From positions 1-64,000 of the IMG/VR virus record IMGVR_UViG_3300008110_010000: 64,000 bases of DNA. One strand, given 5' to 3'. The translations under genes were made by a program, and so were the position numbers. The first letter of the stretch is position 1. Every line of letters starts with the position of its first letter. Shown here piece by piece: positions 12,969 to 63,286 of this stretch. The notes under the pieces were generated by a model. It was not told the DNA's origin and searched no databases. It worked only from the letters and a program-made list of their open reading frames with translations.

Positions 12969-13441
12969 TATATGAAATTTTTTGGTGTGGTTCTGAATTG
13001 AGATCCATAGTTTCCTAATATCTCTTCACCTTCTTTTATCTTTCTAATTGCAACAGGTGCCACATTATTATTGCTATCCACGTTACAGTTTTTCAATCCA
13101 CTGTTCATAAACATTTTTGGCCAAATGTATATCCAGTGATAACCTCGCTCTAAGGGGAAAAATATTTTTCCATATTCCTTAGGTATGATTTGTTCGACCC
13201 CATTTTTATCAACAAACCACATTTTATTGTCAAAGGTTTCGTATAAATTTTTTTGGAGCTTATCAGGGAGTGTGAATAATTCTTCCTGTGTAATTGAATA
13301 TATCCCACTCTCCCCATGCCAAAGATCAAAAACAGATTCACCTGCTTCAATATCTCTAATGGCAAAAAATCCAACGCCCTCTACAGAACTCGGCTTAAGT
13401 ATTGCTGTGACCTTTTGCTGAAGATATTCTAAAGGAGTCAT
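12968..13441 (-). CDS. SET-domain protein
   Basis: SSVEGVGFFAIRDIEAGE...FMNS...IKEGEEILGNYG. Confidence 0.8.
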   Translation of the reverse strand: MTPLEYLQQKVTAILKPSSVEGVGFFAIRDIEAGESVFDLWHGESGIYSITQEELFTLPDKLQKNLYETFDNKMWFVDKNGVEQIIPKEYGKIFFPLERGYHWIYIWPKMFMNSGLKNCNVDSNNNVAPVAIRKIKEGEEILGNYGSQFRTTPKNFI

Positions 13442-29461: not shown

Positions 29462-30115
29462 TTAAATTATTTTGGCGCTAGGCGCTATTTTATTGAATTC
29501 GTTGATCGAATGGCTAGAGTATTCTGGATCTTCAAATATAATTCCATGATTTCCGTTCCCACTTTTATCGAATGTTTTAAATTTTGAATTTCTTTCAAAA
29601 TCAAAAAACGAGTACAGCTTTTTTGATTTCTCGTCAAAGGAATCGACGATTTCATCGAAAACTGCAATTTTATAAATATCCCCTTTGAACCAGCATTCAT
29701 AAGATCCACTGTATGGATTTATAGATCCTATAAAAATATTCTTGTCTGAATAAGATTCAATTGGACCGGTTTCTTTTTCACCTTTTAAAATTCCATCGAT
29801 GTATATTTTAACAGAATCTGAAACTGTCACCATGACTTCCATTCTTTTATGTATATCATCAACAGGTATCCAGATATCGTTATATTGATAGGGTTTAGTG
29901 TACCAAGAGAATTTAACACCATTTGGTTTCTGTAAAAATATTCCCATATGGTATCCTATCCTTCCTACAATCAACGACTCATCCTCTGCAAACTCAGAGA
30001 GTTGAAAATCCCCATAAAGAGAAAAATTCCCCTCCAGATTTTCAAAATTCTTTGTGTTCGTATTATTTTTAGAATTGTTTGGGATGTAATATGCTTTCTT
30101 TTCGAATCTCATCAA
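29462..30115 (-). CDS. LamG/concanavalin A-like domain protein
   Basis: IYIDG, IFIGS, FKGDIYKIAVFD, DKSGNGNHG. Confidence 0.7.
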   Translation of the reverse strand: MMRFEKKAYYIPNNSKNNTNTKNFENLEGNFSLYGDFQLSEFAEDESLIVGRIGYHMGIFLQKPNGVKFSWYTKPYQYNDIWIPVDDIHKRMEVMVTVSDSVKIYIDGILKGEKETGPIESYSDKNIFIGSINPYSGSYECWFKGDIYKIAVFDEIVDSFDEKSKKLYSFFDFERNSKFKTFDKSGNGNHGIIFEDPEYSSHSINEFNKIAPSAKII

Positions 30116-35850: not shown

Positions 35851-36699
35851 TTAGATTGATATTATTTTTTTAATTAAAGAGCTCCATTCTTTATAATCTT
35901 CAAAATAGACGCATCCATATTCAAACATAAAATCAGAATTACTGAGGTCTATCCTAGATTTATTTCTCTTTATAGCATCATACATCACTTTATATTCGTC
36001 AGAATATGAATAATCCTGATTAATATCTGCGACATTTTTGATCCTTTCTAAGCATGTTGAATCCCATTTAAAATGGTGGACCTGGACGGAATATTTTTCT
36101 ACTGGTGCAATTAGTGGATGGCTCCATCCTTGCCACCTCCAGGTAGTCTGCCCATTTATTTTTGCATAATGCTGCCCAGAAGTTATTTCAATTCCTCCTT
36201 TAACCAAGCAGATTTTGTTAGGGCATGCGTTACTCATGGGGTATCTGAAAAATCCGGCTATGGGAAACTGGTCAAAGATTGGTACATCTTCAAGTATCTT
36301 ACAGAACTCCCCGTTGTTTCCTATCCTGTCTAGAAATCCTCCCCTAATTAATTCCCACCCCTGACTTTCACAATCACTAACCATATAATTAGGTGACTCA
36401 GGATAAACGTGAAATTCGTCTATATCAGCAATCATGTACCAGTTGCTTCTTGATTTTTTTATTTGTTCATTATATAGATCAGTAACCCTGTTCCAATCAA
36501 AGATCCTATCATAAACAGTTTTAACTATTTTTACTTTTTCCTTACCTCTGATGGAACTTCTTACCTCTCTCTTTAAATCTGGATGCAGATCAGATTCATA
36601 GACCACAAAATTTATTTCATCTACCATGTTATAATAATGATTGATGAAGTGTGGTATTAGAGGAACCCCATGACCTATTATAGATATTAATTTTATCAA
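35851..36699 (-). CDS. Putative glycosyltransferase (GT2/GT92-like)
   Basis: FINHY, ADIDEF, GQH, HHFKW. Confidence 0.6.
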   Translation of the reverse strand: MIKLISIIGHGVPLIPHFINHYYNMVDEINFVVYESDLHPDLKREVRSSIRGKEKVKIVKTVYDRIFDWNRVTDLYNEQIKKSRSNWYMIADIDEFHVYPESPNYMVSDCESQGWELIRGGFLDRIGNNGEFCKILEDVPIFDQFPIAGFFRYPMSNACPNKICLVKGGIEITSGQHYAKINGQTTWRWQGWSHPLIAPVEKYSVQVHHFKWDSTCLERIKNVADINQDYSYSDEYKVMYDAIKRNKSRIDLSNSDFMFEYGCVYFEDYKEWSSLIKKIISI

Positions 36700-40680: not shown

Positions 40681-41751
40681 ATGAGTATCGCCTTAACTTA
40701 TGATGACATCCAATTAGTTCCTGCTTACTCTGAAGTTGTTTCCAGGAGTACAATCAATCTTAACACTTTGGTGACACGAAGATACGGATTAATTAGACCC
40801 CTGGTGGCTTCCCCGATGGATACGGTGTGTGAACTTGACATGGCCTATAGAATTTTTCTATTCGGAGGAGTTGGATGTATCCATCGTTTCATGCCTATTG
40901 AAAATCAATCCCGGATGATTGAGATGCTAAGATATAAAATATATGGAGACGGATTTGGTGGTCCTTTCGAGGATTGGGGAATCATGTATGACGATTGGCA
41001 TTCTGAGATCAAGCAGATACCTATTATGGCAGCTGTTGGAGCTAATGGCGATTATTTGGATAGAGCAAAAAGTCTAATAAAGAATGGAGCAAATATCATC
41101 CTCATAGACGTAGCTCATGGACATCATAAAAATGTCAAAGATGCAATCGAATCTATAAAATCTATTAGTCCCGAAATTGATGTGATAGCAGGAAATATTG
41201 CAACACCAGAAGCTGCTCAAGATTTAGAATCGTGGGGAGCGGACGGATTAAGAGTTGGTATTGGAGGTGGATCCCTTTGTACAACTAGAGTTAAAACTGG
41301 ATTTGGTATTCCTAACGTAACTTGTATAGAAGAGATATCAAAAATTGCCACAGTTCCTGTTATGGCAGATGGAGGTATTCGAACTAGTGGAGATATTGCT
41401 AAGGCTTTAGCACTTGGGGCAAGCAGTGTGATGCTAGGATCATTGCTTGCAGGGACAGAAGAATCCCCTGGACAGATAGTTGAAAAATCAACGGGTCTAT
41501 ATAAAAGATACAGGGGTGCAGCATCATTAGAAACCAAAACGGTTCACGGACAAGCACAGAGAAATGTAGAGGGGGAATCTACAATTATTCCATATAAAGG
41601 AGGAGCTAAATTTGTTTTAGAGGGATTACTTGACGGGGTTAAATCTGCTCTTTCATATGCAGGTGCGGTTTGTTTGAAAACATATCACCCAAAATATGTT
41701 CAAATTACCAACGCTGGTATGAACGAAGCAAAGCCGCATCTGATAAATTAA
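40681..41751 (+). CDS. IMP dehydrogenase/GMP reductase family (no CBS domains)
   Basis: LTYDDIQLVP, ASPMDTV, DVAHGH, GIGGGSLCTTR, ADGGI, YRGAAS. Confidence 0.9.
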   Translation: MSIALTYDDIQLVPAYSEVVSRSTINLNTLVTRRYGLIRPLVASPMDTVCELDMAYRIFLFGGVGCIHRFMPIENQSRMIEMLRYKIYGDGFGGPFEDWGIMYDDWHSEIKQIPIMAAVGANGDYLDRAKSLIKNGANIILIDVAHGHHKNVKDAIESIKSISPEIDVIAGNIATPEAAQDLESWGADGLRVGIGGGSLCTTRVKTGFGIPNVTCIEEISKIATVPVMADGGIRTSGDIAKALALGASSVMLGSLLAGTEESPGQIVEKSTGLYKRYRGAASLETKTVHGQAQRNVEGESTIIPYKGGAKFVLEGLLDGVKSALSYAGAVCLKTYHPKYVQITNAGMNEAKPHLIN

Positions 41752-41801: not shown

Positions 41802-42183
41802 GGGGGTGTATTTGGCACTTGACAGACATTGGTAGTTCTTTGAGATGATGCAGGCCGAGTTAGTATTGGAAACTCGTTAATCACCTATGCAAACAATAAA
41901 CGACGTAGAATTATCTACAATGACCTTCGAAGACGCTATGTCTTTCGTTGGTGCTGATTACGCAATAGCTGCCTAATCCCTCCCGCACACATCGTGGGGC
42001 TTAAAATAGAATGTGAACCCAGGTGGAATATGACTGAACCCGAAATCGAGTCATCTGAATTTGGTAGTTTAATCAGCCAACTATAAACTACATATTTTGT
42101 TTGTAAAGAAAAACAAGCTAAGCCTGTGAATGAGTTTCTTTTAACAGATGGACTGGACACCGGTTCGATTCCGGTCACCTCCA
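41802..42183 (+). ncRNA. ssrA: tmRNA
   Basis: GGGGGTG/CACCTCC acceptor stem with G3-U70, T-arm GGTTCGATTCC, internal frame 41902-41976 ending YAIAA*. Confidence 0.92.
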
Positions 42184-42199
42184 CAAAAATTAATTTAAT

Positions 42200-44076: not shown

Positions 44077-44850
44077 ATGAGCAAAAATTTGGTAATTTAT
44101 TTAAATGTCTTTGATGACATATCAAAGACAGCACAAAGTGTAGAATCGATTAGAAGAGCATGTCATCGATGGGGTGCTAATTTTTACGAGGTGACAAACG
44201 TTCAGTATCCAAATGCACCTTATCCCTTTCTCTGGGAAACCCTTGCAGCTTTTGAAGAGTTCAATCACTATGATAAAATTTTAAATTTGGATCATGATAT
44301 CATCATAAATTCTAATGCTCCAAACATATTTGAGGAATTAACAGATGAATATGATTTTTGTGCTGTTAGAGACGGGAATCCGGGAGGAAGATTTCCTCAT
44401 AATGATGGATTTCTAAGAGATTCTATTATAAAAACAATTAGTCACGATCAAAATTGCTTTGATCTTTTTCATAGTGTTTTAAAGAATTTTAATTATGAAA
44501 AATACTGGCAAAATTATTTTAATTTAGGTGTCTATCTATTTAACCCCAAAAAATACAATCGATTGATTAAAGAAATCAAGCAATTGGCTTTTGATGACAA
44601 AAGAGTTTATCAAATGCTTATGGGACAGGGATTTCCTTGGCACGCATTACAGAATTTTTTTAATGCTTACATATCTTCCTCCGATCTTAAAATTAAATTA
44701 ATTGACAATACTTGGAATTGGATTATGCCAGATATATCCGAGGAATATCACGATGATTTTTATCTGGGAAAAATGAAACCAAACATCTATCATTTCTGTG
44801 GAACCCCAACATCAAAGGAGGACCTTCCTTTTTATGACAGATGGAAATAA
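44077..44850 (+). CDS. GT8-like glycosyltransferase
   Basis: LNLDHDII, APNIF, YFNLGVYLFN, LQN..N, YHFCG. Confidence 0.7.
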   Translation: MSKNLVIYLNVFDDISKTAQSVESIRRACHRWGANFYEVTNVQYPNAPYPFLWETLAAFEEFNHYDKILNLDHDIIINSNAPNIFEELTDEYDFCAVRDGNPGGRFPHNDGFLRDSIIKTISHDQNCFDLFHSVLKNFNYEKYWQNYFNLGVYLFNPKKYNRLIKEIKQLAFDDKRVYQMLMGQGFPWHALQNFFNAYISSSDLKIKLIDNTWNWIMPDISEEYHDDFYLGKMKPNIYHFCGTPTSKEDLPFYDRWK

Positions 44851-44865: not shown

Positions 44866-45513
44866 ATGGCAAATGGAGTATACAAAATTACAGAAGAATT
44901 TGAAAAATCACTCGAAAGCTATACAGGAGCTCCACATGTTGTAACTTTAGACAATCAGAGTAACGGACTTTTTCTTTCCCTATATTATGAAAATTACGTT
45001 AAAAAGAGCATAGAAAAAGGAAGTATAAAAATTCCAAGTCGAACTTATCCTTCAGTTCCTTGCGAGATTATTCATGCTGGCCTTAAAGTAGAGTTTGAGC
45101 ATGTGAAAGGTAAGACGATTAAAGGTGCATACCAACTAAAAGGGAGCAAGGTTTGGGATTCTGCATTGTGTTTTACCTATAATATGTATAAGAAAAATAC
45201 CCATATGTGCGTTTCTTTTACTGGACCATTTAAGCATTTTAAGTTGTCTAAAGGTGGAGCAATATTAACAGATGATCATGAAGCATATCTTTGGTTTAAA
45301 AGAGCTAGATATAGTGGCAGAAGAGAATGTTCTTATCATGACGATCACTTTGATATGCTGGGATGGAATTTTTATATGATGCCAGAATTAGCAGCAAGGG
45401 GTTTACTCATGATGGGACAATTTTATGATCCTACAACGGGAAAACCTAAAAACAATCCAGATCTGGAACTACCATATCCAGATTTATCAAAATTTGATAT
45501 TTATAAAAAATGA
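44866..45513 (+). CDS. DegT/DnrJ/EryC1/StrS-like aminotransferase (short)
   Basis: TYPSVP, WDSA, SFTGPFKH..GGAIL, GWNFYM; only 215 aa. Confidence 0.8.
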   Translation: MANGVYKITEEFEKSLESYTGAPHVVTLDNQSNGLFLSLYYENYVKKSIEKGSIKIPSRTYPSVPCEIIHAGLKVEFEHVKGKTIKGAYQLKGSKVWDSALCFTYNMYKKNTHMCVSFTGPFKHFKLSKGGAILTDDHEAYLWFKRARYSGRRECSYHDDHFDMLGWNFYMMPELAARGLLMMGQFYDPTTGKPKNNPDLELPYPDLSKFDIYKK

Positions 45514-47693
45514 GTAAAAAATTATCTATAATAATTCCCTCACTAAACAGGGAAAAATTACTTATAAGTTCTATCAATAGCATAGTAGAAATTTTTAATT
45601 CATTCAACTTTCAAGATTATGATGTACATGCTATAGTAAATGGGTCAAACAAAAATACAACAGAAAAAATTAGAGAGAATATTTTTTTACATCATCATGA
45701 AAAAAAATTGAATCCTGGAATAGCGAGAAATATAGGAATTGAAAAAAGCGACTCTGAGTGGATTTGGTTTATTGACGACGACGATGAAATAGTAGGTGAA
45801 AACATATCAAAAGTAATAGATTTTTTATACGACAAAAATGGTAATCATGGATTCGATTTAATAGCTCATTCTTTAAAAAATAAATACATTCCGGAAGATA
45901 ATAAGAGATCTCTATTGGAAAATGTTTGTTTTTTTAAAGAAAAACAGGAGGCATTCAATTACATTTTCAAAAGAGATTTAATAAAAAAGCATAATATATT
46001 ATTTTCCGACGGATTACACGAGGATATCAGATACGTAACAGAACTGATAATAAATTCCTCCATCATTAAAATATTTGATTTTTTCCTGTATAAAAAAATT
46101 AACCGGGATGATTCGATAACTAAAAATCTCAATCCATCTAGAATAGATGGATATTTACTAGCAATCAGCGAGATTCAATCACTAGATAGCGATGAAATTT
46201 CTTCGATGTCTAATGGAATAGTGACACAGTGTCTAGGAACTATCCTATATCTAATAAACAAATCCCAAAATAAGTTGGAGCTACTAGAATATCTGGACAG
46301 CAAATTCACATTTTATCTAAGATCAAAAATAACCGAAACGTATAGTGAAAAAGATACTAATTTCAAATACGCTGTTTCTCTTTACATTAATAAGAAAGAC
46401 AATCTAGTATTTCTTGAAAGATTAAACGAATGCTTTTCTAGCTATCTCTCTTGTAGAGATCTAAAAAACTCAATATTTCTTGGTCCGAAAGAAATAATAG
46501 GATGCTGTAAAAGATTCTTTTATAATGGTAAGATGAAGGGTGACATCGTTTTAATGTCGGAATCAATAGATGTTAATTTAGATTCTATACTTAAAAGAAA
46601 GGCTGAGGTTGAAGATGGGATAAATTCACAGACATATGAACCTTGTGAGGGGTGCCCTTATATAGAAAGATATAGTAGATTAGAAAATAAAAAAATAAAC
46701 TACATAAGCTTAGAAAATTTCACTTATTGCAACATGCGTTGTACTTATTGTTCTCCTAAATATTATGGGGGTAAAGAAGCAGTATACAACACTCATGATA
46801 TAATTAGTCAATTAATAGATGGTGAATATCTTGACGATAAAGTACACGTTGTTTGGGGAGGGGGAGAGCCAACATTACAAAGGGAATTTGGGGAAATAAC
46901 AGAGAAACTAATAAACATAGAAAATGTCTATAAGATAAGAGTTCTTACAAACAGTCTAAGATTTTCAAACGATCTTTATAACCTAGCATCGAATGATAAA
47001 ATAAGGATAGTTACTAGTATAGATGCAGGAACTCAAGATGTATTTAAAAATATCAGGGGAAAAGGAGAAATTTTAACAGTTTTAGAGAACCTAAAAAAAT
47101 ATACAGAGCAAACCAAGGATCCAGAGAATCTAACTTTAAAATACATTCTAACTGAACAAAACTATCATTCCAATCAGTTAGAACAATTTGTAAAAACTAT
47201 AAAAGAATTTGGATTTGAAAACAATTTTGTCCAAATAAGTTGTAATTTTTTATATGATCATCTGGGTGATGAGATAATATTTTCAATATACGAATTAGCA
47301 GCTAGACTATTAAATAATGGATTTAAGTTTGTTTATTTTGATGATTTAATCCGTGACAGATTAGCTATAAGTGAGGATATTGCGGATAAAGTAATCAATT
47401 ATTTGTCGGAAAAATACCTCTATCACGATGATATAATTTCTTATAAGAGTAATAAACGGGTAGTTCTTTGGGGAGATGGATACCAATCTAGATGGATAAA
47501 AAACAGCACAACCTTTGGAAAATCTAATAAAATAAGGGGAATCGTTTCCGATATAAATGGATTTAACAATTTGAATTTAAATGTGGGTTTTACAGTATCC
47601 CCTGCCGCAATCCAACAATTACCAGACATATTTAAGGAAATTAAGAAGGAAAAAGATGTCTATAATAAATTGAAATTCCACATATTTCTATAA
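45510..47693 (+). CDS. GT2 glycosyltransferase - radical SAM fusion
   Basis: SIIIPS..R, ARNIG, FIDDDD, HED; then CNMRCTYC and GGGEPTL. Confidence 0.8.
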   Translation: MSKKLSIIIPSLNREKLLISSINSIVEIFNSFNFQDYDVHAIVNGSNKNTTEKIRENIFLHHHEKKLNPGIARNIGIEKSDSEWIWFIDDDDEIVGENISKVIDFLYDKNGNHGFDLIAHSLKNKYIPEDNKRSLLENVCFFKEKQEAFNYIFKRDLIKKHNILFSDGLHEDIRYVTELIINSSIIKIFDFFLYKKINRDDSITKNLNPSRIDGYLLAISEIQSLDSDEISSMSNGIVTQCLGTILYLINKSQNKLELLEYLDSKFTFYLRSKITETYSEKDTNFKYAVSLYINKKDNLVFLERLNECFSSYLSCRDLKNSIFLGPKEIIGCCKRFFYNGKMKGDIVLMSESIDVNLDSILKRKAEVEDGINSQTYEPCEGCPYIERYSRLENKKINYISLENFTYCNMRCTYCSPKYYGGKEAVYNTHDIISQLIDGEYLDDKVHVVWGGGEPTLQREFGEITEKLINIENVYKIRVLTNSLRFSNDLYNLASNDKIRIVTSIDAGTQDVFKNIRGKGEILTVLENLKKYTEQTKDPENLTLKYILTEQNYHSNQLEQFVKTIKEFGFENNFVQISCNFLYDHLGDEIIFSIYELAARLLNNGFKFVYFDDLIRDRLAISEDIADKVINYLSEKYLYHDDIISYKSNKRVVLWGDGYQSRWIKNSTTFGKSNKIRGIVSDINGFNNLNLNVGFTVSPAAIQQLPDIFKEIKKEKDVYNKLKFHIFL

Positions 47694-49996: not shown

Positions 49997-50320
49997 ATGA
50001 TTACAGTAACTGAAAAAGCAGCACAAAGAATTAAATACCTAATAGAAGAAGCAGAAGATTCTAAGTTTTATCTAAGAGTATCTGTTAAAGGGGGAGGATG
50101 TAGCGGACTTTCATATGATTTATCATTTGATGACGAGATGAACGAAAAAGACACTCTTTATGAAGATAAAGCAGTTAAAATATTAGTGGATAATAAATCC
50201 ATTCTTTATCTGTTTGGAACTGAACTAGACTTCTCTGACGGACTTAACGGTAAGGGATTTCAGTTCGTAAATCCTAATGCCTCCCGCACATGTGGATGTG
50301 GAGAAAGCTTTGCTGTGTAG
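49997..50320 (+). CDS. iscA: Fe-S cluster assembly A-type carrier (IscA/HesB)
   Basis: GGCSGLSY, GFQFVNPNA..TCGCGESF. Confidence 0.92.
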   Translation: MITVTEKAAQRIKYLIEEAEDSKFYLRVSVKGGGCSGLSYDLSFDDEMNEKDTLYEDKAVKILVDNKSILYLFGTELDFSDGLNGKGFQFVNPNASRTCGCGESFAV

Positions 50321-50336
50321 CTTGATATATAGCTAC

Positions 50337-51029
50337 ATGATAAAGGGGTTTTCTGAATACATTAACGAAGCTTATAGCAATCCTAAAAATTATACGGATT
50401 TAAAATACGGAAATCCACAAAAGTGGCAAAAAGAAGCCATGGACAGAGGATCTAACCTTTTAAAATCTGTCAAAGAATCAAATCTTTGGGAAAAATGGAC
50501 TTCTAGTTTACCTCCCAATCAAGATTCAGAGGAGGTAAAATCCGATTTACAAAATTTAATTCTCATGGGAAATTCTTTAACCGAGGAGGAAAAAGAGTTT
50601 GTAAAGGATTCAGAAAATGATATGCTAGGAATCTTTGAGAAATTTTTAAAGTTAAATGGGGTTGATTCTATTAAGAAAGAAGATTTGGAATCGGTAACAG
50701 ATGAATTGGATCCGATCACTTTTATTTTAAAATATCAGTTTAACTATCCTAGACCACTTCAACTGGCTCTTGTCCACGACATACCCCTTTATCCAGAGCA
50801 GCCAACTAACGCTTGCAGTCCCGCTTATCCTTCCGGACACTCAATAGATGCTTTTGTGATTGCTGGATTGATTGCTAAAAAATACCCTCAACTTGCCGAT
50901 GATGTTTCTAAGCTTTCTGAAAGAGTTTCTATGACTAGAAACCTGGGAGGAATACATTTCACGTTTGATTCATCCTTTGGTAAAGAAATAGCAGAAGATA
51001 TACTTTCTTTGGATCTTTTATCCCTTTAG
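50337..51029 (+). CDS. PAP2/haloperoxidase-superfamily phosphatase with capsid-targeting-like N-terminus
   Basis: K..FNYPRP, YPSGH, R..GGIHF; likely start MIKGFSEYINE just after GATATATA. Confidence 0.75.
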   Translation: MIKGFSEYINEAYSNPKNYTDLKYGNPQKWQKEAMDRGSNLLKSVKESNLWEKWTSSLPPNQDSEEVKSDLQNLILMGNSLTEEEKEFVKDSENDMLGIFEKFLKLNGVDSIKKEDLESVTDELDPITFILKYQFNYPRPLQLALVHDIPLYPEQPTNACSPAYPSGHSIDAFVIAGLIAKKYPQLADDVSKLSERVSMTRNLGGIHFTFDSSFGKEIAEDILSLDLLSL

Positions 51030-51146: not shown

Positions 51147-54100
51147 ATGGCAAATTATAGAATTTTAGGACAAGAAACTGTTAACAATTCGGTAAGTCCG
51201 GGACCTACCCTTGTAACACTTTATACGGTTCCTCAAAATGCTTCCATTCTAATCAATGCAATAACCGGATATAATGAGGGATTTAATAGTGGATATCTTA
51301 CCGTTGCAGTAAAAAGGAACGGGGACGAGGACTATTCTCCAGATCAAATTGTTATAAATACTCCCTTAGCACCCGGTGCTTCAATACAAATTTCTCCTCA
51401 ATTTTCTCCTGTTGGTTTAACTGCCGGCGACGTAATACTTTTAGTTGGTAATTATTCTCCTGCCCCTACAACAGTAGCGGTAACCTTATTCGGTGAAGAC
51501 GGGGCTTCTAGCGGTGGATCCGGCAATGCAGGAACATCCGGAACTTCAGGAAACAGTGGGGGCTCAAGTACTTCAGGAAGTAATGGTACTAGCGGGACTT
51601 CGGGAACTAATGGATCTACAGGAACTGGTGGTACTAGTGGTACCTCTGGAATGAACGGATCTATCGGAACTAATGGTACGAGTGGAACCTCAGGTGAAAC
51701 CTTCGGAACTAGTGGAACGTCAGGGGCAGCTGGTGCTCCTGGAGCAGCGGGATCTTCTGGAACATCTGGGGTTTCCGGAGCATCTGGTTCTTCTGGAACC
51801 TCTGGGGTTTCCGGAGCATCCGGTTCTTCCGGAACATCGGGAAATTCAGGTTCTTCTGGAACATCTGGGATTTCCGGGGCATCTGGTTCTTCCGGAACAT
51901 CAGGAAATTCGGGATCCTCTGGTACATCAGGAAATTCGGGAACCTCTGGTACTTCGGGAGAATCTGGTTCTGCTGGTACATCCGGATCATCTGGAACATC
52001 AGGAAACTCCGGGTCATCCGGTACATCAGGAAACTCCGGGTCCTCCGGTACATCAGGAAATTCGGGAACCTCTGGTACTTCTGGGGAATCTGGCTCTTCT
52101 GGAACATCAGGATTCTCTGGGTCCTCCGGAACATCAGGAAACTCCGGGTCATCCGGTACATCAGGATCCTCTGGAGAACCCGGTTCTGCCGGAACATCGG
52201 GATCCTCAGGTACATCTGGTACATCAGGAAACTCCGGGTCATCCGGTACATCAGGGTCATCCGGTACATCAGGGTCCTCTGGTACATCTGGTGCTGATGG
52301 TACATCCGGTTCTTCCGGAACCTCGGGAAACCCTGGATCATCAGGGACCTCTGGAACATCAGGAAACTCTGGATCATCGGGGACCTCCGGATCCGCTGGA
52401 ACTTCTGGTTTAAGCGGAATATCTGCAGGACAGATTTATTATTTTAACCAATCTCAGTCTTCTGACATTTCTCCATATAAAGTCCTTAGTGTTTACCCAT
52501 CAGGAGCTGCTGAACAAACAGTTCCTATGGTATTAACGGGCGGGCAATTGAATGTTCTGGTAAGTCAATTCCTGACCCCCGAATTGGGATTTGCTGTAAT
52601 TCCACCAGGCACTCAGAGATTTCATCTGCATTTTTTAAAACAACAGTTTAATGATGACATAGATGGCTATGTTACCATAGAACTTGCAAATTCGTCAGGT
52701 GTAGGATATGGCACTATTATTCAATCAAACAAAGCTTTAATTGGATGGGTGAGTGTTTCTCAATCTTATGAGCTGTTGGTTGATATTGTTTTACCTTCAG
52801 TATACATAAACACCACAGACAGAATGATTGTCAAGGTTTACGTTGACAATAATGAAGCAACCGTCAGAAATTTAACTTGGTACACAGAGGGGGCTCAAAA
52901 CTATTCATATGTAATCACATCGGTTGGAGCAATTGTAGCAAGCTCTGGAACGTCAGGGAGTTCTGGAACTAGTGGATCAAGCGGAACTTCGGGATCCGGG
53001 GGTTCATCAGGAACTAGCGGATCTAGTGGATCGGAGGGAACTTCAGGTAGCTCTGGTACTTCCGGCAGTTCTGGAACCTCTGGAGAAGATGGAACTTCAG
53101 GTAGCTCTGGTACTTCCGGCAGTTCTGGAACCTCTGGAGAAGATGGAACTTCGGGATCTGGGGGTTCATCAGGAACTAGCGGATCTAGTGGATCGGAGGG
53201 AACTTCAGGTAGCTCTGGTACTTCGGGAACCTCTGGAGAAGATGGAACTTCAGGTAGCTCTGGTACTTCGGGAACCTCTGGAGAAGATGGAACTAGTGGA
53301 TCTTCAGGTACATCAGGAACCTCGGGGGTGTGCGAGTGTCCACACAGCTACACTATCACGGCTCCAACGGATATCACGTGTTACTCTTTAACAAATGACG
53401 GAGATCCCGACAACGTAAATAGTACAAACTATCTCGATTGTAACGGGAATCCTGCGGTCATTTACAATAAAATTTTTCTCACACCAGCTACTTATTTCTG
53501 TGCTCAGACCGGATCTGTTACAACTGATTCGGGGCTCACTGTAATATCAGTACCTGATGATCCTGGATCTTGCGACGGATGTTGCGATGGATATGCTTAT
53601 TCTTATACCGACGAAACAGATACTATCATAAGTGGAATCATATATGACGGAGAATCTCTAACTTTCTGTGCGATCCCAGGATCTGTAGTTTGGTCCCATA
53701 CAATAGTAGACAATGGGCATTGTGTAGGAAGTTCAGGTACTTCCGGCAGTTCTGGTTCGAATGGTACGTCAGGTAGCTCTGGTACTTCCGGCAGTTCTGG
53801 ATCTTCTGGGACATCAGGAACTGATGGTTCCTCCGGTAGTACAGGTACTTCTGGTTCTTCCGGCAGTTCTGGATCTTCTGGGACATCAGGAACTGATGGT
53901 TCCTCCGGTAGTACAGGTACTTCTGGATCCTCAGGGTCATCTGGAACTTCCGGAACTGATGGATCTTCAGGTACATCAGGTAACTCTGGTTCTTCTGGAA
54001 CCTCAGGATCAGCAGGTACATCAGGAAATGAGGGTCCCCCTGGATCTTCGGGAACGTCAGGAATTGATGGAACCAACGGATCGACAGGTTCTTCTGGAAC

Positions 54101-55778
54101 CTCAGGAAACTCTGGTTCTTCAGGTACTTCAGGTACTTCAGGTAGTTCTGGTTCAACTGGTACTTCAGGTAGTTCTGGTTCTTCTGGAACCTCTGGTTCT
54201 TCTGGTTCAACTGGTACTTCAGGTACTTCAGGTACTTCCGGTAGTTCTGGTTCAACTGGTACTTCAGGTAGTTCTGGTTCTTCTGGAACCTCAGGAAACT
54301 CTGGATCTTCTGGAACCTCTGGAGCATCAGGATCTTCTGGAACCTCAGGAAACTCTGGTTCTTCTGGAACCTCTGGAGCATCAGGTAGTTCTGGTTCTTC
54401 TGGAACCTCTGGAGCATCAGGATCTTCTGGAACCTCAGGAAACTCTGGATCTTCTGGAACCTCAGGAAACTCTGGATCTTCTGGAACCTCTGGAGCATCA
54501 GGATCTTCTGGAACCTCAGGAAACTCTGGATCTTCTGGAACCTCTGGAGCATCAGGATCTTCTGGAACCTCTGGAGCATCGGGAGCTAATGGATCTTCTG
54601 GAACCTCTGGAGCATCAGGATCTTCTGGAACCTCTGGAGCATCAGGAGCTAATGGATCTTCTGGAACCTCTGGAGCATCAGGAGCTAATGGATCTTCTGG
54701 AACCTCAGGAAACTCTGGTTCTTCTGGAACCTCTGGAGCATCAGGAGCTAATGGATCTTCTGGAACCTCAGGATCTTCTGGAACCCGAGGTTCCTCAGGA
54801 ACTTCAGGAGCTTCCGGTGGAAACGGAACATCCGGAACTTCAGGAGCTTCCGGGGGAAGCGGAACATCCGGAACTTCGGGAGCTTCTAGTTCAGCAATAT
54901 CTAGTAATAACATCGACAACTATGTTGTTACCATGACTGGAAACAATTCCACGCCTTTCCAAGGGGAGCCTAACTTAACATTCGATAATACGAGACTTTT
55001 TGTAACTGGGAAAGTAAGGGTTTATCAAAATCCATTAAGCATAAGTTCAGGAAGTCTTTCTTGGCCTTTAAGATCTGGAGCAAATGCAACAGTTACTTTA
55101 AATCAAAATGTAACTACGTTTACACTTAGCGAATTTGAAGCTGGAGATACTGGGGTATTAATAGTAAAACAAGATGCTACTGGAGGTAGAACAATGGTAC
55201 TTCCCTCTAGTTCACAAGTAGTTGGAGGAGGATCTTATACCCCAACATCCGCTGCAAACTCACAAGACGTTCTTGGAGTTTACTACGACGGAACAACATA
55301 TTTCTGGACCATTGGGCTCGCTAGTGTTACAGGTAACTTACTTACAATAAACAATAATGCAGATCACAGAATATTGACTGCAACTGGTAGTGCTACTTCG
55401 ATAGACGGAGAAACAGGATTGACTTATAACAGCAGTACATTAGCAGTAACTGGAGCAATCACAGCAACAGGAGATATCACTGCTTATTCATCTTCGGATG
55501 AAAGATTAAAGGATAATATTTCGGTTATTCAGGATGCTTTGGAAAAGGTCTCTAGCATAAGAGGAGTGGAATTTGATTGGAACGACAAGGCTCATGAAGT
55601 TAATAGAGGTCACGATCTTGGAGTAATTGCTCAAGAGCTGATTAAAGTTCTTCCTGATGCAGTTAAAGAAAGAGAAGATGGATATTATGGGGTAAGATAT
55701 GACAGAATTATACCTCTTCTCATAGAGGCTATAAAAGACTTAAGAAAAGAAATAGAAGAACTTAAAAGAGAAAAATAA
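51147..55778 (+). CDS. Tail fibre-like protein with G/S/T repeats and C-terminal peptidase S74 chaperone
   Basis: Three GTSGSS repeat blocks; SSDERLKDNI...GVIAQE...YDRIIPLLIEAIK at the C-terminus. Confidence 0.85.
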   Translation: MANYRILGQETVNNSVSPGPTLVTLYTVPQNASILINAITGYNEGFNSGYLTVAVKRNGDEDYSPDQIVINTPLAPGASIQISPQFSPVGLTAGDVILLVGNYSPAPTTVAVTLFGEDGASSGGSGNAGTSGTSGNSGGSSTSGSNGTSGTSGTNGSTGTGGTSGTSGMNGSIGTNGTSGTSGETFGTSGTSGAAGAPGAAGSSGTSGVSGASGSSGTSGVSGASGSSGTSGNSGSSGTSGISGASGSSGTSGNSGSSGTSGNSGTSGTSGESGSAGTSGSSGTSGNSGSSGTSGNSGSSGTSGNSGTSGTSGESGSSGTSGFSGSSGTSGNSGSSGTSGSSGEPGSAGTSGSSGTSGTSGNSGSSGTSGSSGTSGSSGTSGADGTSGSSGTSGNPGSSGTSGTSGNSGSSGTSGSAGTSGLSGISAGQIYYFNQSQSSDISPYKVLSVYPSGAAEQTVPMVLTGGQLNVLVSQFLTPELGFAVIPPGTQRFHLHFLKQQFNDDIDGYVTIELANSSGVGYGTIIQSNKALIGWVSVSQSYELLVDIVLPSVYINTTDRMIVKVYVDNNEATVRNLTWYTEGAQNYSYVITSVGAIVASSGTSGSSGTSGSSGTSGSGGSSGTSGSSGSEGTSGSSGTSGSSGTSGEDGTSGSSGTSGSSGTSGEDGTSGSGGSSGTSGSSGSEGTSGSSGTSGTSGEDGTSGSSGTSGTSGEDGTSGSSGTSGTSGVCECPHSYTITAPTDITCYSLTNDGDPDNVNSTNYLDCNGNPAVIYNKIFLTPATYFCAQTGSVTTDSGLTVISVPDDPGSCDGCCDGYAYSYTDETDTIISGIIYDGESLTFCAIPGSVVWSHTIVDNGHCVGSSGTSGSSGSNGTSGSSGTSGSSGSSGTSGTDGSSGSTGTSGSSGSSGSSGTSGTDGSSGSTGTSGSSGSSGTSGTDGSSGTSGNSGSSGTSGSAGTSGNEGPPGSSGTSGIDGTNGSTGSSGTSGNSGSSGTSGTSGSSGSTGTSGSSGSSGTSGSSGSTGTSGTSGTSGSSGSTGTSGSSGSSGTSGNSGSSGTSGASGSSGTSGNSGSSGTSGASGSSGSSGTSGASGSSGTSGNSGSSGTSGNSGSSGTSGASGSSGTSGNSGSSGTSGASGSSGTSGASGANGSSGTSGASGSSGTSGASGANGSSGTSGASGANGSSGTSGNSGSSGTSGASGANGSSGTSGSSGTRGSSGTSGASGGNGTSGTSGASGGSGTSGTSGASSSAISSNNIDNYVVTMTGNNSTPFQGEPNLTFDNTRLFVTGKVRVYQNPLSISSGSLSWPLRSGANATVTLNQNVTTFTLSEFEAGDTGVLIVKQDATGGRTMVLPSSSQVVGGGSYTPTSAANSQDVLGVYYDGTTYFWTIGLASVTGNLLTINNNADHRILTATGSATSIDGETGLTYNSSTLAVTGAITATGDITAYSSSDERLKDNISVIQDALEKVSSIRGVEFDWNDKAHEVNRGHDLGVIAQELIKVLPDAVKEREDGYYGVRYDRIIPLLIEAIKDLRKEIEELKREK
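51507..52420 (+). repeat. GTSG/SSG low-complexity coding repeat, block 1
   Basis: 9/18/27-nt period units such as tcttctggaacatc. Confidence 0.9.
52941..53328 (+). repeat. GTSG repeat block 2, with EDGTSG units
   Basis: Near-exact duplications such as gggggttcatcaggaactagcggatctagtggatcggagggaac and tctggagaagatggaact. Confidence 0.9.
53727..54890 (+). repeat. GTSG repeat block 3
   Basis: Many near-identical ggatcttctggaacctc units. Confidence 0.9.
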
Positions 55779-56131
55779 TGACACATTTAGAGCCAGTAAT
55801 AGTTCAAAATGAAATACCTCCATACTTTGATATTTACTTTGAAAACACCCTTCCAGAAGGTGAGGATGAATTTTCTTTTTCTTTTGGACCCCAACCGGGA
55901 TACGATACTTGGGAGATAGAATTCGCTGAAGGATCAACTGATTGGGAGGTTAAACCTGATGGCTGGGTACAGATTGAAATAGGATGGGGTCAAGAAACAT
56001 ATTTAACCCCTTTCCATCATTTGAACCAAATAATACATTTAGAATTTAATAGAATCCATGTGATGAAACCCGGAACTCTAAAAACATTAAAATTAAGAGG
56101 TAGAAGAATAGCATTGAAAGATAAATCATGA
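55778..56131 (+). CDS. Hypothetical protein downstream of the tail fibre
   Basis: 117 aa, TAATG overlap with the tail fibre stop. Confidence 0.6.
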   Translation: MTHLEPVIVQNEIPPYFDIYFENTLPEGEDEFSFSFGPQPGYDTWEIEFAEGSTDWEVKPDGWVQIEIGWGQETYLTPFHHLNQIIHLEFNRIHVMKPGTLKTLKLRGRRIALKDKS

Positions 56132-56832
56132 GCCAGAGATATTACATGACCAGCTTAGGAAGAAGGCCTACTGGACCATCTACTGCTATCATCGGTAGTG
56201 ATGCCGATGTTCTGATGTTCAGATATGTTTGGCCAGGAACTTTGAATGGAGGTGATGCTGATACATTCACTGGCATTGAACCAGGAACTGGTACATCCTA
56301 TGATGGTATAAAAAATGCTAGCGGGGCACCAACCCGTTATGTTGGATATGCTCCAGGGGGAGGAATGACATCTACTGTGGGCTCGACGACAGGCATAAAT
56401 ACCTCAACAACACTCATTTATTGGGCTGGTGATAATACCTCAACTGCTGGACAGGAAGTTGTTTTAGTTAGACCCAAATCAATAGCTGCATTAGACACCT
56501 CTATAACAAGATGGAAAATCGGAATATATCTCAATTGGTATGATACAGTAGGGGTTGGGTGTATGGACTTTATAATCAGGTGCTACAGTGGTTCAACTTT
56601 CTCGGATACCGGTACAGACATCAGTGCATCAGGGGGAACGCTTTTAAGAACTTACCTGTTTAATGCTAATACAAACAACCAAAATAATCCCTCTGGGACT
56701 GGATACCCATCGAATGGTATCAATGGATATGCTCAAATCGGTATTTTTGAATTTTTTTCCAGTGGAGATGGGTTTTTTAGATATAATCTAACCTCTATCG
56801 GGAGCTGCAGTACTGAGAATGATATGGCTTAA
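56128..56832 (+). CDS. Putative virion structural protein
   Basis: G/T/S-rich, 234 aa, translationally coupled to the tail fibre operon. Confidence 0.55.
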   Translation: MSQRYYMTSLGRRPTGPSTAIIGSDADVLMFRYVWPGTLNGGDADTFTGIEPGTGTSYDGIKNASGAPTRYVGYAPGGGMTSTVGSTTGINTSTTLIYWAGDNTSTAGQEVVLVRPKSIAALDTSITRWKIGIYLNWYDTVGVGCMDFIIRCYSGSTFSDTGTDISASGGTLLRTYLFNANTNNQNNPSGTGYPSNGINGYAQIGIFEFFSSGDGFFRYNLTSIGSCSTENDMA

Positions 56833-59863: not shown

Positions 59864-59930
59864 TTGGTAGCCGCACTAGACTTAGGATCTAGTGTCGAAA
59901 GACGTGGGGGTTCGAGTCCCTCCTGGGTCA
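59849..59930 (+). tRNA. tRNA-Leu (TAG)
   Basis: ctaga-cttagga-tctag, variable arm gtc-gaaa-gac. Confidence 0.92.
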
Positions 59931-59938
59931 CACAGAAA

Positions 59939-60556
59939 ATGATAGTTCACTTTATTTGGGTTGGGGATCGAAAAATTCCTCAGCATTTTTTGTCTAATCT
60001 GGAAAAGTTTAAATCCTTAAATCCCTCTGAAGAAATTCTGGAGTGGGACGATGAGCATTTAATCCCATTAATTAAATCTTACGGCAGGGAAGAACTTTAT
60101 TTTTCTTCTGGTATTTTCCACAAGTTACAAATTGCTAGATACACTGTTTTAGATTACTATGGAGGAATTTACATAGACTATGATCTGAATTGGAAAGTCT
60201 CAGTCAAAGAAGGACTAGGATTAAGAACAGAAAGGGATCTGTGTTTAATTAAAAGAAGATCCCTATATTTCTACAAGAAAGAAGAATCAATCTTAAAGAT
60301 TGATCTATTAGACGATTATGTAATTTTTGCTAAGCCTGGAATTACAAACGGGTTTATAGATTATAGCCTGAACAGGTTCCTAGATAAATCTAGAATCAAA
60401 GAATGCCAAACTGAACCTTTCAGCGTGTATTCTTTGACTGAATGGGTTCACGATTCACAATTCGATTTTGATTGTTTCGATCATACTGAGATATATGACA
60501 GCGGGGAATGTAAGCTAGCATATCATGATAACAAAAAAACCTGGGAGGGAAAATAA
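59939..60556 (+). CDS. GT32-like glycosyltransferase (DxD sugar-binding)
   Basis: IVHFIWVG, ARY..L..YGGIYIDYD; start moved out of the tRNA. Confidence 0.75.
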   Translation: MIVHFIWVGDRKIPQHFLSNLEKFKSLNPSEEILEWDDEHLIPLIKSYGREELYFSSGIFHKLQIARYTVLDYYGGIYIDYDLNWKVSVKEGLGLRTERDLCLIKRRSLYFYKKEESILKIDLLDDYVIFAKPGITNGFIDYSLNRFLDKSRIKECQTEPFSVYSLTEWVHDSQFDFDCFDHTEIYDSGECKLAYHDNKKTWEGK

Positions 60557-62491: not shown

Positions 62492-63286
62492 ATGAGAAAA
62501 ATACAGTCATTTTCACAATTTGTCAGCGAAGCTCAATTTGCTATAAGTGATCCCTCAACAGCAGGAGAGAAATTAGCAGGTGTCCTAGTAGCTAATAAAG
62601 ACGCAAAAGAAGAACCAAAGGGAAGTAATAAAGGACCGGAAGTAGACAAATATCTACAATCAGTAGGATTAGGCCCAGGTTTACCCTGGTGTGCAGCCTT
62701 TGTTTATTATATTTTTGACCAGCTTTCCAAGCAACTTGGAACTTCAAACCCACTTCCTAAGACTGGAGGGGTAATGAATCACTGGAATAAATCAGACCAG
62801 GATGCAAAGATTACCATAGATCAAGCTAGGATCAATCCAAATTTAGTTAGGCCAGGACAAGTATTTATAATGACCAGACCAGGTAAAGGATTGGGACATA
62901 CTGGTATAATAGTATCAGTAGATCCACAAAAGAAAACCATGACAACTATGGAGGGTAACACCAACGATCAGCTTTCTGGTGAAGGTAACAGAGTCGGAAC
63001 TAATGTGAGAAAATTGGATCAAGGAACCCTAGTAGGATTCTTGGATTATTTTAAAACAAGTAGAACACCAGAATTTGAAGCAGATCTTTCTAAAGCAATA
63101 ACAGGTCAAGCCACAGCATTACCTCCTCTTTCAGCTGACGATGTTCCAGGAGACGATGTAGTAGGTCCGGTTAAAACCGATGCTGGAGGACAATTAATGG
63201 CTCAAGCTCTTGGTAATGTTGCAGCGGCAACTGCAAATATGGAAGCTCCTAGAACACCAGAAGAAGTTCCGGTGGAACTTAGATAA
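62492..63286 (+). CDS. CHAP-domain peptidoglycan amidase-like protein
   Basis: PWCAAFV, GHTGI, EGNT catalytic motifs; starts MRKIQSFSQFVSE. Confidence 0.8.
   Translation: MRKIQSFSQFVSEAQFAISDPSTAGEKLAGVLVANKDAKEEPKGSNKGPEVDKYLQSVGLGPGLPWCAAFVYYIFDQLSKQLGTSNPLPKTGGVMNHWNKSDQDAKITIDQARINPNLVRPGQVFIMTRPGKGLGHTGIIVSVDPQKKTMTTMEGNTNDQLSGEGNRVGTNVRKLDQGTLVGFLDYFKTSRTPEFEADLSKAITGQATALPPLSADDVPGDDVVGPVKTDAGGQLMAQALGNVAAATANMEAPRTPEEVPVELR

What the first reader, a model, noticed from the sequence alone, without database searches (positions are those of the whole stretch)
51147..55778. Tail fibre built on roughly 800 residues of G-T-S-G-S-S repeats, a plausible substrate of the glycosylation genes
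Seen: three repeat blocks with Gly at every third position (GTS GSS GNS GAS) and no Pro/Hyp collagen content, separating globular domains, ending in an S74 chaperone. The window holds more than 10 GT-like genes. Inference: a Ser/Thr collagen-like triple helix or mucin-like stalk that is O-glycosylated or sulfated; repeat-number change could tune fibre length.
Basis: partly seen in the sequence, partly recalled or inferred. Interest (0 to 1): 0.6.

Follow-up and report, generated by a model that had tools for sequence, protein, structure and literature searches.

The report
Serine/threonine collagen-like phage fibre
This gene of an uncultured jumbo phage encodes a long, probably trimeric fibre whose collagen-like stalk is built almost only of glycine, serine and threonine; it is a real but fairly ordinary kind of phage fibre, and nothing found here ties it to the sugar-transfer genes around it.

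Summary
ORF 51147-55778 (+) encodes 1543 aa with 272 Gly-X-Y triplets (816 aa) in three blocks. Gly is at 100% of first positions; X is T/S/A/N; Y is 82% Ser; Pro is 0.6% and charged residues 2.6%. The protein ends in a Peptidase_S74 chaperone with an invariant Ser1450/Lys1455 pair.

The host genome is a 219-kb jumbo myovirus. Its capsid protein is nearest to Lak and Flavobacteriia-type jumbo phages, and it carries three more Ser/Thr Gly-X-Y genes.

The jelly-roll domain D1 recurs in uncultured phage fibres, always between Gly-X-Y blocks. Those blocks are either Pro/Gln-type or Pro-free Ser/Thr-type, so the Ser/Thr repeats most likely stand in for a collagen triple helix. Relatives reach about 990 triplets.

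Repeat number differs between near-identical contigs. Some of those differences break the frame at the longest exact repeat, which looks like an assembly error.

The glycosylation link is not supported. Pfam finds 6 glycosyltransferase (GT) domains, not more than 10. The GT7-lectin genes occur in complete phages that have no collagen gene, and complete phages with Ser/Thr fibres lack every window GT tested.

Verdict: a new member of a known kind. The stabiliser-free composition is the interesting part. Glycosylation remains untested speculation.

The parts
51147..51512 (+). N-terminal domain (aa 1-122), the presumed virion-attachment end
   Evidence: No Pfam hit. No relatives apart from the same phage population. 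Only insignificant PDB sequence hits.
51513..52424 (+). Gly-X-Y block 1 (aa 123-426; about 100 triplets; breaks STS at 141-143 and F at 186)
   Evidence: Collagen Pfam matches.
52425..52946 (+). Domain D1 (aa 427-600), a jelly-roll beta-sandwich knob
   Evidence: AF2 model with pLDDT 77. Foldseek matches the CocE/NonD C-terminal jelly roll, CBM22 and viral jelly rolls, and BFVD collagen/S74 proteins of uncultured phages. Thirty invariant columns across 13 relatives.
52947..53333 (+). Gly-X-Y block 2 (aa 601-729; 43 triplets; periodic GED/GSE triplets)
   Evidence: 45- and 54-nt tandem units.
53334..53726 (+). Domain D2 (aa 730-860), Cys-rich; GVCEC and GHCVG lie at the two helix junctions
   Evidence: All 10 Cys of the protein lie here or in the last triplet of block 2. 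No PDB or Atlas relative.
53727..54887 (+). Gly-X-Y block 3 (aa 861-1247; 129 triplets), the only part whose length differs between contigs
   Evidence: It holds the longest exact repeat, 80 nt at 54279 and 54450.
54888..55493 (+). Distal tip (aa 1248-1449), the presumed receptor-binding end of the mature fibre
   Evidence: aa ~1315-1386 are 40% identical to the C-terminus of the phage's own ORF 103528-105300. aa 1342-1449 are shared with other S74 fibres. The monomer model was poor.
55494..55778 (+). Peptidase_S74 intramolecular chaperone (aa 1450-1543) with the Ser1450/Lys1455 motif SDERLK, plus the stop codon
   Evidence: Pfam 7e-16. Ser and Lys are invariant in 18 relatives. The motif aligns to 8jov and 6f45. 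Its position was computed.
55778..56832 (+). Two small ORFs (117 and 234 aa) whose start and stop codons overlap the fibre gene and each other; possible fibre accessory proteins
   Evidence: No Pfam hit. Only phrog_24956, of unknown function.

Best explanation
The gene encodes a segmented, homotrimeric, collagen-like host-recognition fibre of an uncultured jumbo myovirus whose host is probably a Bacteroidota bacterium. Shown here: the domain order is N-terminal domain, 100 triplets, jelly-roll D1, 43 triplets, Cys-rich D2, 129 triplets, tip, then an S74 chaperone. Inferred: the C-terminal S74 domains of three chains trimerise and set the register. The tip and the Gly-X-Y blocks then fold from the C- to the N-terminus as a triple helix, with Gly at the axis and small hydroxylated Ser/Thr side chains facing the solvent. 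The chaperone then cuts itself off at Ser1450. At 0.286 nm per residue the three helical segments would be about 87, 37 and 111 nm long, giving a beaded fibre of roughly 250 nm. The N-terminal domain would anchor it to the virion and the tip (aa 1248-1449) would meet the host. The repeat arrays grow and shrink by unequal recombination between units, which changes the fibre's reach. The fibre need not be modified by the neighbouring sugar genes; they look like an independent accessory island.
For: Perfect Gly periodicity over 272 triplets. Pfam Collagen and S74. Ser1450 and Lys1455 are invariant and align to solved tail fibres. PHROGs tail-fibre families match. D1 homologues always lie between Gly-X-Y blocks, which are G-P-Q, G-A-Q or G-F-Q type in some relatives and Pro-free G-[ST]-S type in others, so the Ser/Thr repeats fill the structural slot of a collagen helix. 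GTS is encoded by 30 different 9-mers and GSS by 26, so selection acts on the protein pattern rather than on a recent DNA expansion. Three further Ser/Thr Gly-X-Y genes lie in the same genome, one of them with S74. In-frame repeat-number differences exist between near-identical phages: 354, 353, 353 and 317 triplets in the 271-kb group, and +24 aa in L012. The GTs and the Ser/Thr fibres dissociate in both directions across complete genomes.
Against: The repeats lack every stabiliser described for collagen-like proteins: Pro at X, Thr or Gln at Y, and Lys-Asp/Glu salt bridges (PMC11923368, PMC8968730). (Gly-Pro-Thr)10 is a random coil unless it is glycosylated (PMC11923368), so an unmodified helix may be only marginally stable. 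The gene lies about 65-80 kb from the capsid gene and the other S74 fibre, inside an accessory-gene island, and its N-terminal domain has no known relatives, so its place on the virion is unknown. Presence in virions is not shown.
Confidence: 0.6

Rival explanations
1. One reading: the Ser/Thr stalk is densely O-glycosylated (or sulfated) by phage enzymes encoded around it, and the glycans stabilise the helix or shield the fibre, as in BclA or vent-worm cuticle collagen.
For: The gene is flanked on the same strand by GT8, DegT, a GT2-radical-SAM fusion, an oxidoreductase and a sugar-transfer ATP-grasp upstream, and by a GT32-like DXD protein downstream. The repeats lack all known stabilisers. 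Thr glycosylation can induce a triple helix (PMC11923368). Virion glycosylation by phage GTs is known in mycobacteriophages (cited in PMC12619734).
Against: Complete genomes G001 (270 kb, about 990 Ser/Thr triplets) and G003 (66 kb) have no homologue of the window's GT7-lectin, GT8, GT2-radical-SAM or GT32-like proteins. Complete genomes G006 and G008 carry the GT7-lectin gene but no collagen-like gene. GT2 domains occur with Ser/Thr-type and Ala/Gln-type fibres alike. Thr sits at X, not at the Y position where glycosylated Thr is known to stabilise. No sulfotransferase was found. In related aquatic myophages such GT islands are read as host O-chain modification (PMC7029224).
Confidence: 0.15
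2. The repeats form no triple helix. They are flexible, disordered Gly/Ser/Thr linkers (a mucin-like tether) between folded knobs.
For: Gly/Ser-rich sequences are classic flexible linkers. Ser at Y and Thr at X are low-propensity residues for the collagen helix (recalled from host-guest peptide work, not tested here). No structure prediction of the blocks was obtained.
Against: A disordered linker does not need Gly at exactly every third residue for 272 of 272 triplets, nor would it keep that phase across relatives up to 639 consecutive triplets. Relatives place canonical Pro/Gln collagen repeats in the same slots. A C-terminal trimerising chaperone holds three chains in register.
Confidence: 0.1
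3. The molecule is as described but sits on the capsid or neck as a whisker or hair that catches cells or particles, rather than serving as a baseplate tail fibre.
For: The gene lies outside the structural module: the capsid gene is at 131 kb and another S74 collagen fibre at 118-121 kb. The N-terminal anchor domain is unique. The phage has at least four Gly-X-Y fibre genes, more than one tail-fibre set needs.
Against: The best-scoring PHROGs families are all annotated as tail or tail fibre. S74 chaperones are typical of tail fibres and tail spikes. Hypervariable islands that mix tail-fibre and GT genes are described for aquatic myophages (PMC7029224).
Confidence: 0.2
4. The Gly-X-Y tracts fold into intramolecular polyglycine-II/polyproline-II bundles, as in snow-flea antifreeze protein or the phage S16 gp38 adhesin, rather than an intermolecular triple helix.
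For: Those folds also use Gly-rich tripeptide repeats with small residues (recalled knowledge, not tested here).
Against: Such bundles need regular turns every few triplets and extra Gly. Here the runs are uninterrupted for up to 129 triplets, up to 639 in relatives, with Gly almost absent from X and Y (7 of 544 positions).
Confidence: 0.03

Closest known systems
Collagen-like phage tail-fibre proteins ('bacteriophage collagen', Smith et al. 1998; Prochlorococcus phage P-SSM2 orf028, PMC1079782; PHROGs 6320, 8745 and 5073)
   Same: Long Gly-X-Y arrays inside a fibre protein, interrupted by globular domains, sitting in a hypervariable region. P-SSM2 orf028 is 49% Gly-X-Y with Pro, Ser or Thr at X and Y. 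The PHROG matches score around 1e-100.
   Different: Here Pro is essentially absent (0.6%), Ser alone fills 82% of Y, and charged residues make up 2.6%. The D1, D2 and N-terminal domains have no match in cultured-phage records.
Fibres and spikes with a C-terminal S74 intramolecular chaperone (coliphage K1F endosialidase, T5 L-shaped tail fibre; PDB 8jov, 6f45)
   Same: A C-terminal PF13884 domain with the Ser-x5-Lys motif (SDERLK, Ser1450 and Lys1455) and a helical C-terminal tail.
   Different: In the solved examples the chaperone follows beta-helical or beta-sandwich shafts. Here it follows a small tip domain at the end of a collagen-like stalk. Self-cleavage was not tested.
BclA exosporium filament of Bacillus anthracis and the related glycosylated Thr-rich collagen-like proteins
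   Same: A Hyp-free microbial collagen-like filament rich in hydroxy amino acids, with glycosylation genes nearby.
   Different: BclA repeats are G-P-T, with Pro at X and the glycosylated Thr at Y, and it has a C1q/TNF-like C-terminal trimer domain. Here the repeats are G-T-S and G-S-S with Thr at X, the trimer domain is an S74 chaperone, and glycosylation is neither shown nor backed by co-occurrence.
Typical bacterial and viral collagen-like proteins stabilised by Pro, Thr/Gln or Lys-Asp/Glu salt bridges (Scl2, EPclA; PMC11923368, PMC3368898)
   Same: The Gly-X-Y register, a flanking trimerisation domain, and folding from the C- to the N-terminus.
   Different: KGD/KGE triplets make up as much as 13% of viral triplets, yet none can occur here because the repeats contain no Lys. 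Pro at X is 19-31% in bacteria and 0.4% here. Thr at Y is 32-48% in bacteria and 3% here.
Mimivirus collagen-like fibril proteins and mycobacteriophage virion glycosylation
   Same: Both are precedents for virus-encoded enzymes that modify the virus's own surface proteins.
   Different: Mimivirus modifies hydroxylysine, and there is no Lys here. Mycobacteriophages glycosylate the C-termini of capsid and tail-tube proteins. No orthologous enzyme link was found here.

Membership tests
Collagen-like protein (Pfam PF01391, triple-helix repeat) | Uninterrupted Gly-X-Y register over at least 6 triplets | tested here: met
   272 triplets with 100% Gly at position 1; the longest run is 129 triplets. 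Pfam 1e-101.
Collagen-like protein (Pfam PF01391, triple-helix repeat) | An adjacent trimerisation or nucleation domain | tested here: met
   C-terminal Peptidase_S74 chaperone at aa 1450-1543.
Collagen-like protein (Pfam PF01391, triple-helix repeat) | Known stabilising composition (Pro at X, Hyp/Thr/Gln/Arg at Y, or Lys-Asp/Glu pairs) | tested here: not met
   Pro 5/816, Lys 0, Arg 1, Asp+Glu 20, Thr at Y 3%, Gln 0. Reference values come from PMC8968730 and PMC11923368.
Collagen-like protein (Pfam PF01391, triple-helix repeat) | Actual triple-helical conformation | not testable with these tools
This needs CD, EM or a crystal structure.
S74 intramolecular-chaperone fibre or spike | A C-terminal PF13884 domain scoring above its cut-off | tested here: met
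   58.7 bits against a cut-off of 22; 65.2 bits in the genome scan.
S74 intramolecular-chaperone fibre or spike | Catalytic Ser with Lys five residues downstream | tested here: met
   SDERLK at aa 1450-1455. Both residues are invariant in 18 relatives and align to 8jov and 6f45.
S74 intramolecular-chaperone fibre or spike | Autoproteolytic release of the chaperone after trimer assembly | not testable with these tools
   Requires expression of the protein and SDS-PAGE or MS.
Glycosylated Thr-type collagen-like filament (BclA type) | Thr at the Y position of G-P-T-like triplets | tested here: not met
   Y is 82% Ser and 3% Thr. Thr sits at X (41%). Pro at X is 0.4%.
Glycosylated Thr-type collagen-like filament (BclA type) | Dedicated glycosyltransferases that travel with the filament gene | tested here: not met
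   The GT7-lectin, GT8, GT2-radical-SAM and GT32-like genes are absent from complete Ser/Thr-fibre phages G001 and G003. GT7-lectin is present in the collagen-free complete phages G006 and G008.
Glycosylated Thr-type collagen-like filament (BclA type) | Glycans demonstrated on the repeat region | not testable with these tools
   Needs MS or glycostaining of virions.
Mucin-like disordered Ser/Thr stalk | Ser/Thr/Pro-rich sequence with no strict residue periodicity | tested here: not met
   There is a strict 3-residue Gly periodicity and almost no Pro.
Tail fibre (location on the baseplate) | An N-terminal domain homologous to a known baseplate or tail attachment domain, or a gene position inside the tail module | tested here: inconclusive
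   The N-terminal domain has no relatives. The gene lies outside the capsid and tail module. The PHROG tail-fibre matches are driven largely by the repeats and the S74 domain.

The most novel reading that the evidence does not exclude
The Pro-free, charge-free G-[TS]-S helix cannot stand alone. It is held together by dense O-linked modification of its roughly 430 Ser/Thr residues, carried out by phage enzymes from the surrounding island (GT8, GT2-radical-SAM, GT32-like, GT7-lectin, ATP-grasp). This would make a virus-built 'glyco-collagen' or proteoglycan-like fibre, and each phage lineage would use its own non-orthologous transferases, which would explain the lack of co-occurrence.
Probability: 0.12. 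Interest if true: 0.8.

Novelty: new member of a known kind. Interest (0 to 1): 0.38.

Why it matters
Collagen-like fibres capped by an S74 chaperone are a familiar phage design, so the gene's role is not surprising. What stands out is the composition: hundreds of triplets here, and up to about 990 in relatives, with none of the features currently held to stabilise or guide collagen folding (Pro/Hyp, Thr or Gln at Y, Lys-Asp/Glu clamps). If these sequences do form triple helices unaided, they define a hydroxyl-only stabilisation regime. That would interest collagen biophysicists and designers of recombinant collagens. If they need glycans, they would be the first glycosylated phage fibres of this kind. 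Either result is cheap to obtain, because the S74 domain offers a natural folding nucleus for recombinant fragments. The repeat arrays also give a simple, observable route by which uncultured jumbo phages can change fibre length.

Tried and rejected
No verdict.

3. The monomer AF2 model of the tip plus S74 region was poor (pLDDT 47), so it was not used for fold search.

4. N-terminal domain: PDB sequence search, the word search and a viral-contig scan found nothing outside the same phage population.

5. D2: nothing in PDB, and the Atlas score of 0.79 is below the useful range.

6. A cyanophage or T4-like identity was suggested by S74 hits to Synechococcus phages and by the Gp23 Pfam match. It was rejected because the capsid protein's nearest relatives are Lak, Tenacibaculum, Chryseobacterium, Flavobacterium, PAU and XacN1 jumbo phages.

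7. A tRNA link: the Ser, Thr and Gly tRNAs lie just downstream, but codon use in the repeats matches the rest of the genome, and the four Gly-X-Y genes hold only 11-14% of the Gly, Ser and Thr codons. No special link.

8. Junction cysteines as a general stabiliser were rejected because relatives have none.

9. The promoter and terminator scan gave counts no different from shuffled sequence.

10. Adjacency of GT7-lectin homologues to Ser/Thr fibres: 4 of 34 foreign loci have one within 10 kb, about what chance gives in genomes with several such genes.
Full report
**Observation.** The window is the first 64 kb of a 219,355-bp IMG/VR virus record, linear and estimated 79% complete. ORF 51147..55778 (+) encodes 1543 aa. 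The several long ORFs in other frames and on the other strand inside it are by-products of the GGN-NCN-TCN periodicity. A direct scan finds Gly-X-Y runs at aa 123-140, 144-185 and 187-426, at 601-729, and at 861-1247. Together they make 272 triplets, or 816 residues. Gly fills every first position. X is Thr 41%, Ser 35%, Ala 9% and Asn 8%. Y is Ser 82%. GTS (103) and GSS (76) dominate. Pro is 5/816, there is no Lys, and there are 21 charged residues in all. Pfam reports Collagen (1e-101) and Peptidase_S74 at aa 1450-1507 (7e-16). PHROGs reports tail-fibre families at around 1e-100.

**The phage.** It has a Gp23-type major capsid gene at 131 kb. That protein's nearest relatives are an uncultured 462-kb phage (46%), the Lak megaphages (41%), and jumbo phages of Tenacibaculum, Chryseobacterium, Flavobacterium, Sphingomonas and Xanthomonas. 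This points to a jumbo myovirus with a probable Bacteroidota host, which is an inference. The genome carries a tmRNA and 21 tRNAs. It has three more genes with the same G-T-S/G-S-S style: 103528-105300, 118382-120898 (which also ends in S74), and 218473 to the contig end.

**Anatomy.** The N-terminal domain (aa 1-122) has no relatives outside this phage population.
- Block 1 has about 100 triplets, block 2 has 43 and block 3 has 129.
- D1 (aa 427-600) folds as a jelly-roll beta-sandwich in an AF2 model with pLDDT 77. It resembles the C-terminal jelly roll of CocE/NonD hydrolases, CBM22 and viral jelly rolls. Its closest structural matches are 'collagen triple helix repeat' and 'intramolecular chaperone' proteins of uncultured Caudovirales. 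It has no match in cultured-phage records.
- D2 (aa 730-860) holds all ten cysteines. GVCEC closes block 2 and GHCVG opens block 3, which may form inter-chain disulfide staples (an inference). Relatives lack this feature.
- The tip (aa 1248-1449) shares a 72-aa module, 40% identical, with the C-terminus of the phage's own 590-aa Gly-X-Y protein.
- The S74 domain begins at Ser1450 within the motif SDERLK. Ser1450 and Lys1455 are invariant in 18 relatives and align with the same motif in solved tail fibres 8jov and 6f45.
- Two small ORFs are translationally coupled downstream.

**Relatives and what they say about the repeats.** D1 homologues always lie between Gly-X-Y blocks. In some relatives the blocks are G-P-Q, G-A-Q or G-F-Q type. 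In others they are Pro-free G-[ST]-S type: P0005, P0009, P0011, L095, L106-L109 and the L097 group. The same domain frame thus carries either canonical or Ser/Thr-type collagen repeats. This is the strongest available argument that the Ser/Thr tracts do the same structural job, namely a triple helix. Four contigs of about 271 kb carry a homologue of more than 3400 aa, with blocks of 354 and 639 triplets and no Pro. Within the window gene, GTS is written with 30 different 9-mers and GSS with 26, and all six Ser codons are used. The pattern is therefore maintained at the protein level.

**Repeat-length variation.** Three other contigs (L012, L014, L015) carry the whole gene with 0-1 substitutions, and they differ only by indels inside block 3; a fourth, L013, carries only the gene's 3' part and has no indels there. 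L012 is in frame, with +72 nt giving 1567 aa. L014 and L015 lose the reading frame at a single point each. Those points lie beside the longest exact repeat in the gene, 80 nt at 54279 and 54450. This pattern is typical of short-read mis-assembly, so the exact triplet count of block 3, the window's included, is uncertain. Cleaner evidence comes from the 271-kb group. Those contigs are 99.4-99.7% identical, all in frame, and have 354, 353, 353 and 317 triplets in block 1. Repeat number does change on short evolutionary scales. Read-level proof was not obtainable.

**The glycosylation idea.** Scans of about 60 window ORFs find the following.
- Six GT domains: two GT7 domains fused to ConA-like lectin domains (32805-35647), a weak GT2 (35854-36699), a GT8 (44077-44847), a GT2-radical-SAM fusion (45510-47690) and a GT32-like DXD protein (59864-60553).
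- Sugar-nucleotide and sugar-modifying enzymes, six radical-SAM proteins, several P4H-like 2OG oxygenases, methyltransferases, a PAP2 phosphatase and an IscA-type carrier.
- That is six GT domains, not more than ten, although the fibre gene does lie inside this island.

The comparative tests do not support a link.
- GT7-lectin has no homologue in G001 (complete, about 990 Ser/Thr triplets) or G003 (complete, Ser/Thr fibre). Neither do GT8, GT2-radical-SAM or GT32-like.
- Conversely, GT7-lectin homologues occur in 34 foreign phage contigs. These include complete genomes G006 (288 kb, terminal repeats) and G008 (170 kb), which have no collagen-like gene at all.
- Only 4 of the 34 foreign loci have a Ser/Thr Gly-X-Y gene within 10 kb, which is about the chance level.
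- GT2 domains occur in all five genomes tested, whatever the repeat type.
- For sulfation there is only a partial APS-kinase-like P-loop hit and no sulfotransferase.
- In related aquatic myophages such islands, which mix tail-fibre genes and GTs, are described and read as host-surface modification (PMC7029224).

**Why the idea is still not absurd.** Published surveys state that viral and bacterial collagen-like proteins rely on Pro at X, Thr or Gln at Y, and Lys-Asp/Glu salt bridges. They also report that (Gly-Pro-Thr)10 is a random coil unless its Thr is galactosylated (PMC11923368, PMC8968730). This protein has none of those features. Either long Ser/Thr helices are stable enough on their own, helped by length, cool water, flanking trimeric knobs and hydration through hydroxyl groups, or something modifies them. 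The data here cannot decide. I put unaided folding clearly ahead, because lineages that share the repeat style share none of the window's four GT genes tested here (GT7-lectin, GT8, GT2-radical-SAM, GT32-like).

**Mechanism (shown versus inferred).** Shown: the domain order, the periodicity, the S74 motif, relatives with interchangeable repeat types, and length variation between contigs. Inferred: S74-driven trimerisation and folding from the C- to the N-terminus; self-cleavage at Ser1450; helical segments of about 87, 37 and 111 nm (0.286 nm per residue); D1 as a carbohydrate-binding knob; the tip as the receptor binder; and unequal recombination as the means of changing length. Where the fibre sits on the virion, tail or head and neck, is open.

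**Not run.** The three-chain prediction was not run because the daily limit was reached. The large representative-protein search was not used, since family scans and the word search had already placed the protein.

**Verdict.** This is a real, well-described feature: a collagen-like, S74-capped fibre of an uncultured jumbo phage, and a member of a metagenome-wide but uncharacterised family. It is a new member of a known kind, and its stabiliser-free Ser/Thr composition is the point worth a bench test. The proposed role as substrate of the neighbouring glycosylation genes is not supported by the evidence available.

Noticed in passing
window 41802-42184 and 43848-63972 (continuing to 66097 in the genome): The phage carries a tmRNA and 21 tRNAs. 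Ser(tga), Thr(tgt), Ser(gga) and Ser(gct) lie directly after the fibre operon, and two Gly tRNAs lie at about 66 kb. Codon use in the repeats does not differ from the rest of the genome, so no special link was found.
   Followed up: partly
window 4573-5640, 24506-25672, 25657-26991, 27904-29460, 30115-31494, 45510-47690; 49997-50317: There are six radical-SAM genes. In two of them the SPASM domain lies N-terminal to the radical-SAM core, the reverse of the usual order, and one is fused to a GT2 domain. An IscA-type Fe-S carrier gene lies next to the fibre gene. Their substrates are unknown.
   Followed up: no
window 6856-7356, 10339-11426, 11939-12649: A tandem family of small P4H-like 2OG-Fe(II) oxygenases (PF13640, phrog_81). 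The fibre has almost no Pro or Lys, so it is an unlikely target.
   Followed up: partly
window 32805-35647 (-): Two adjacent GT7 (beta-1,4-galactosyltransferase-like) domains are fused to ConA-like lectin domains. Homologues at 31-60% identity occur in 34 other large phage contigs, including complete genomes that have no collagen-like gene.
   Followed up: yes
window 12537-13441 (-) and 13609-15480 (-): Two SET-domain ORFs, and a 624-aa protein with a Hint/intein-like C-terminal domain.
   Followed up: no
window 53334-53726: All ten cysteines of the fibre lie in or at the edges of D2. GVCEC ends block 2 and GHCVG begins block 3. This recalls the inter-chain cystine knots at collagen helix junctions. 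Relatives lack the feature.
   Followed up: partly
L097, L099, L103, L116 (IMG/VR contigs of about 271 kb): The homologous fibre gene exceeds 3400 aa, with blocks of 354 and 639 Pro-free G-[ST]-S triplets. As a triple helix that would be roughly 850 nm. Block 1 varies between 317 and 354 triplets among contigs that are 99.4-99.7% identical.
   Followed up: partly
L014 gene nt ~3129-3137; L015 gene nt ~3444-3446 (window ~54275-54590): Two otherwise identical contigs lose the fibre reading frame at single points beside the 80-nt exact repeat. This is probably assembly error, and it warns that the triplet count of block 3 in any short-read assembly is uncertain.
   Followed up: yes
genome 103528-105300, 118382-120898, 218473-219355: Three further G-T-S/G-S-S collagen-like genes lie in the same phage. 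One has its own S74 chaperone and lies near the structural genes, and one is cut off by the contig end.
   Followed up: partly
window 55778-56832: Two ORFs (117 and 234 aa) with overlapping start and stop codons follow the fibre gene. The second is Gly/Ser/Thr/Asn-rich and matches only a PHROG of unknown function. It could be an accessory or adhesin subunit.
   Followed up: no
window 50277-51026, 59864-60553, 62492-63283, 40681-41748: Other neighbours: a PAP2-type phosphatase just upstream of the fibre, a GT32-like DXD glycosyltransferase, a CHAP-domain protein (possibly a lysin), and an IMPDH/GMP-reductase family enzyme.
   Followed up: no
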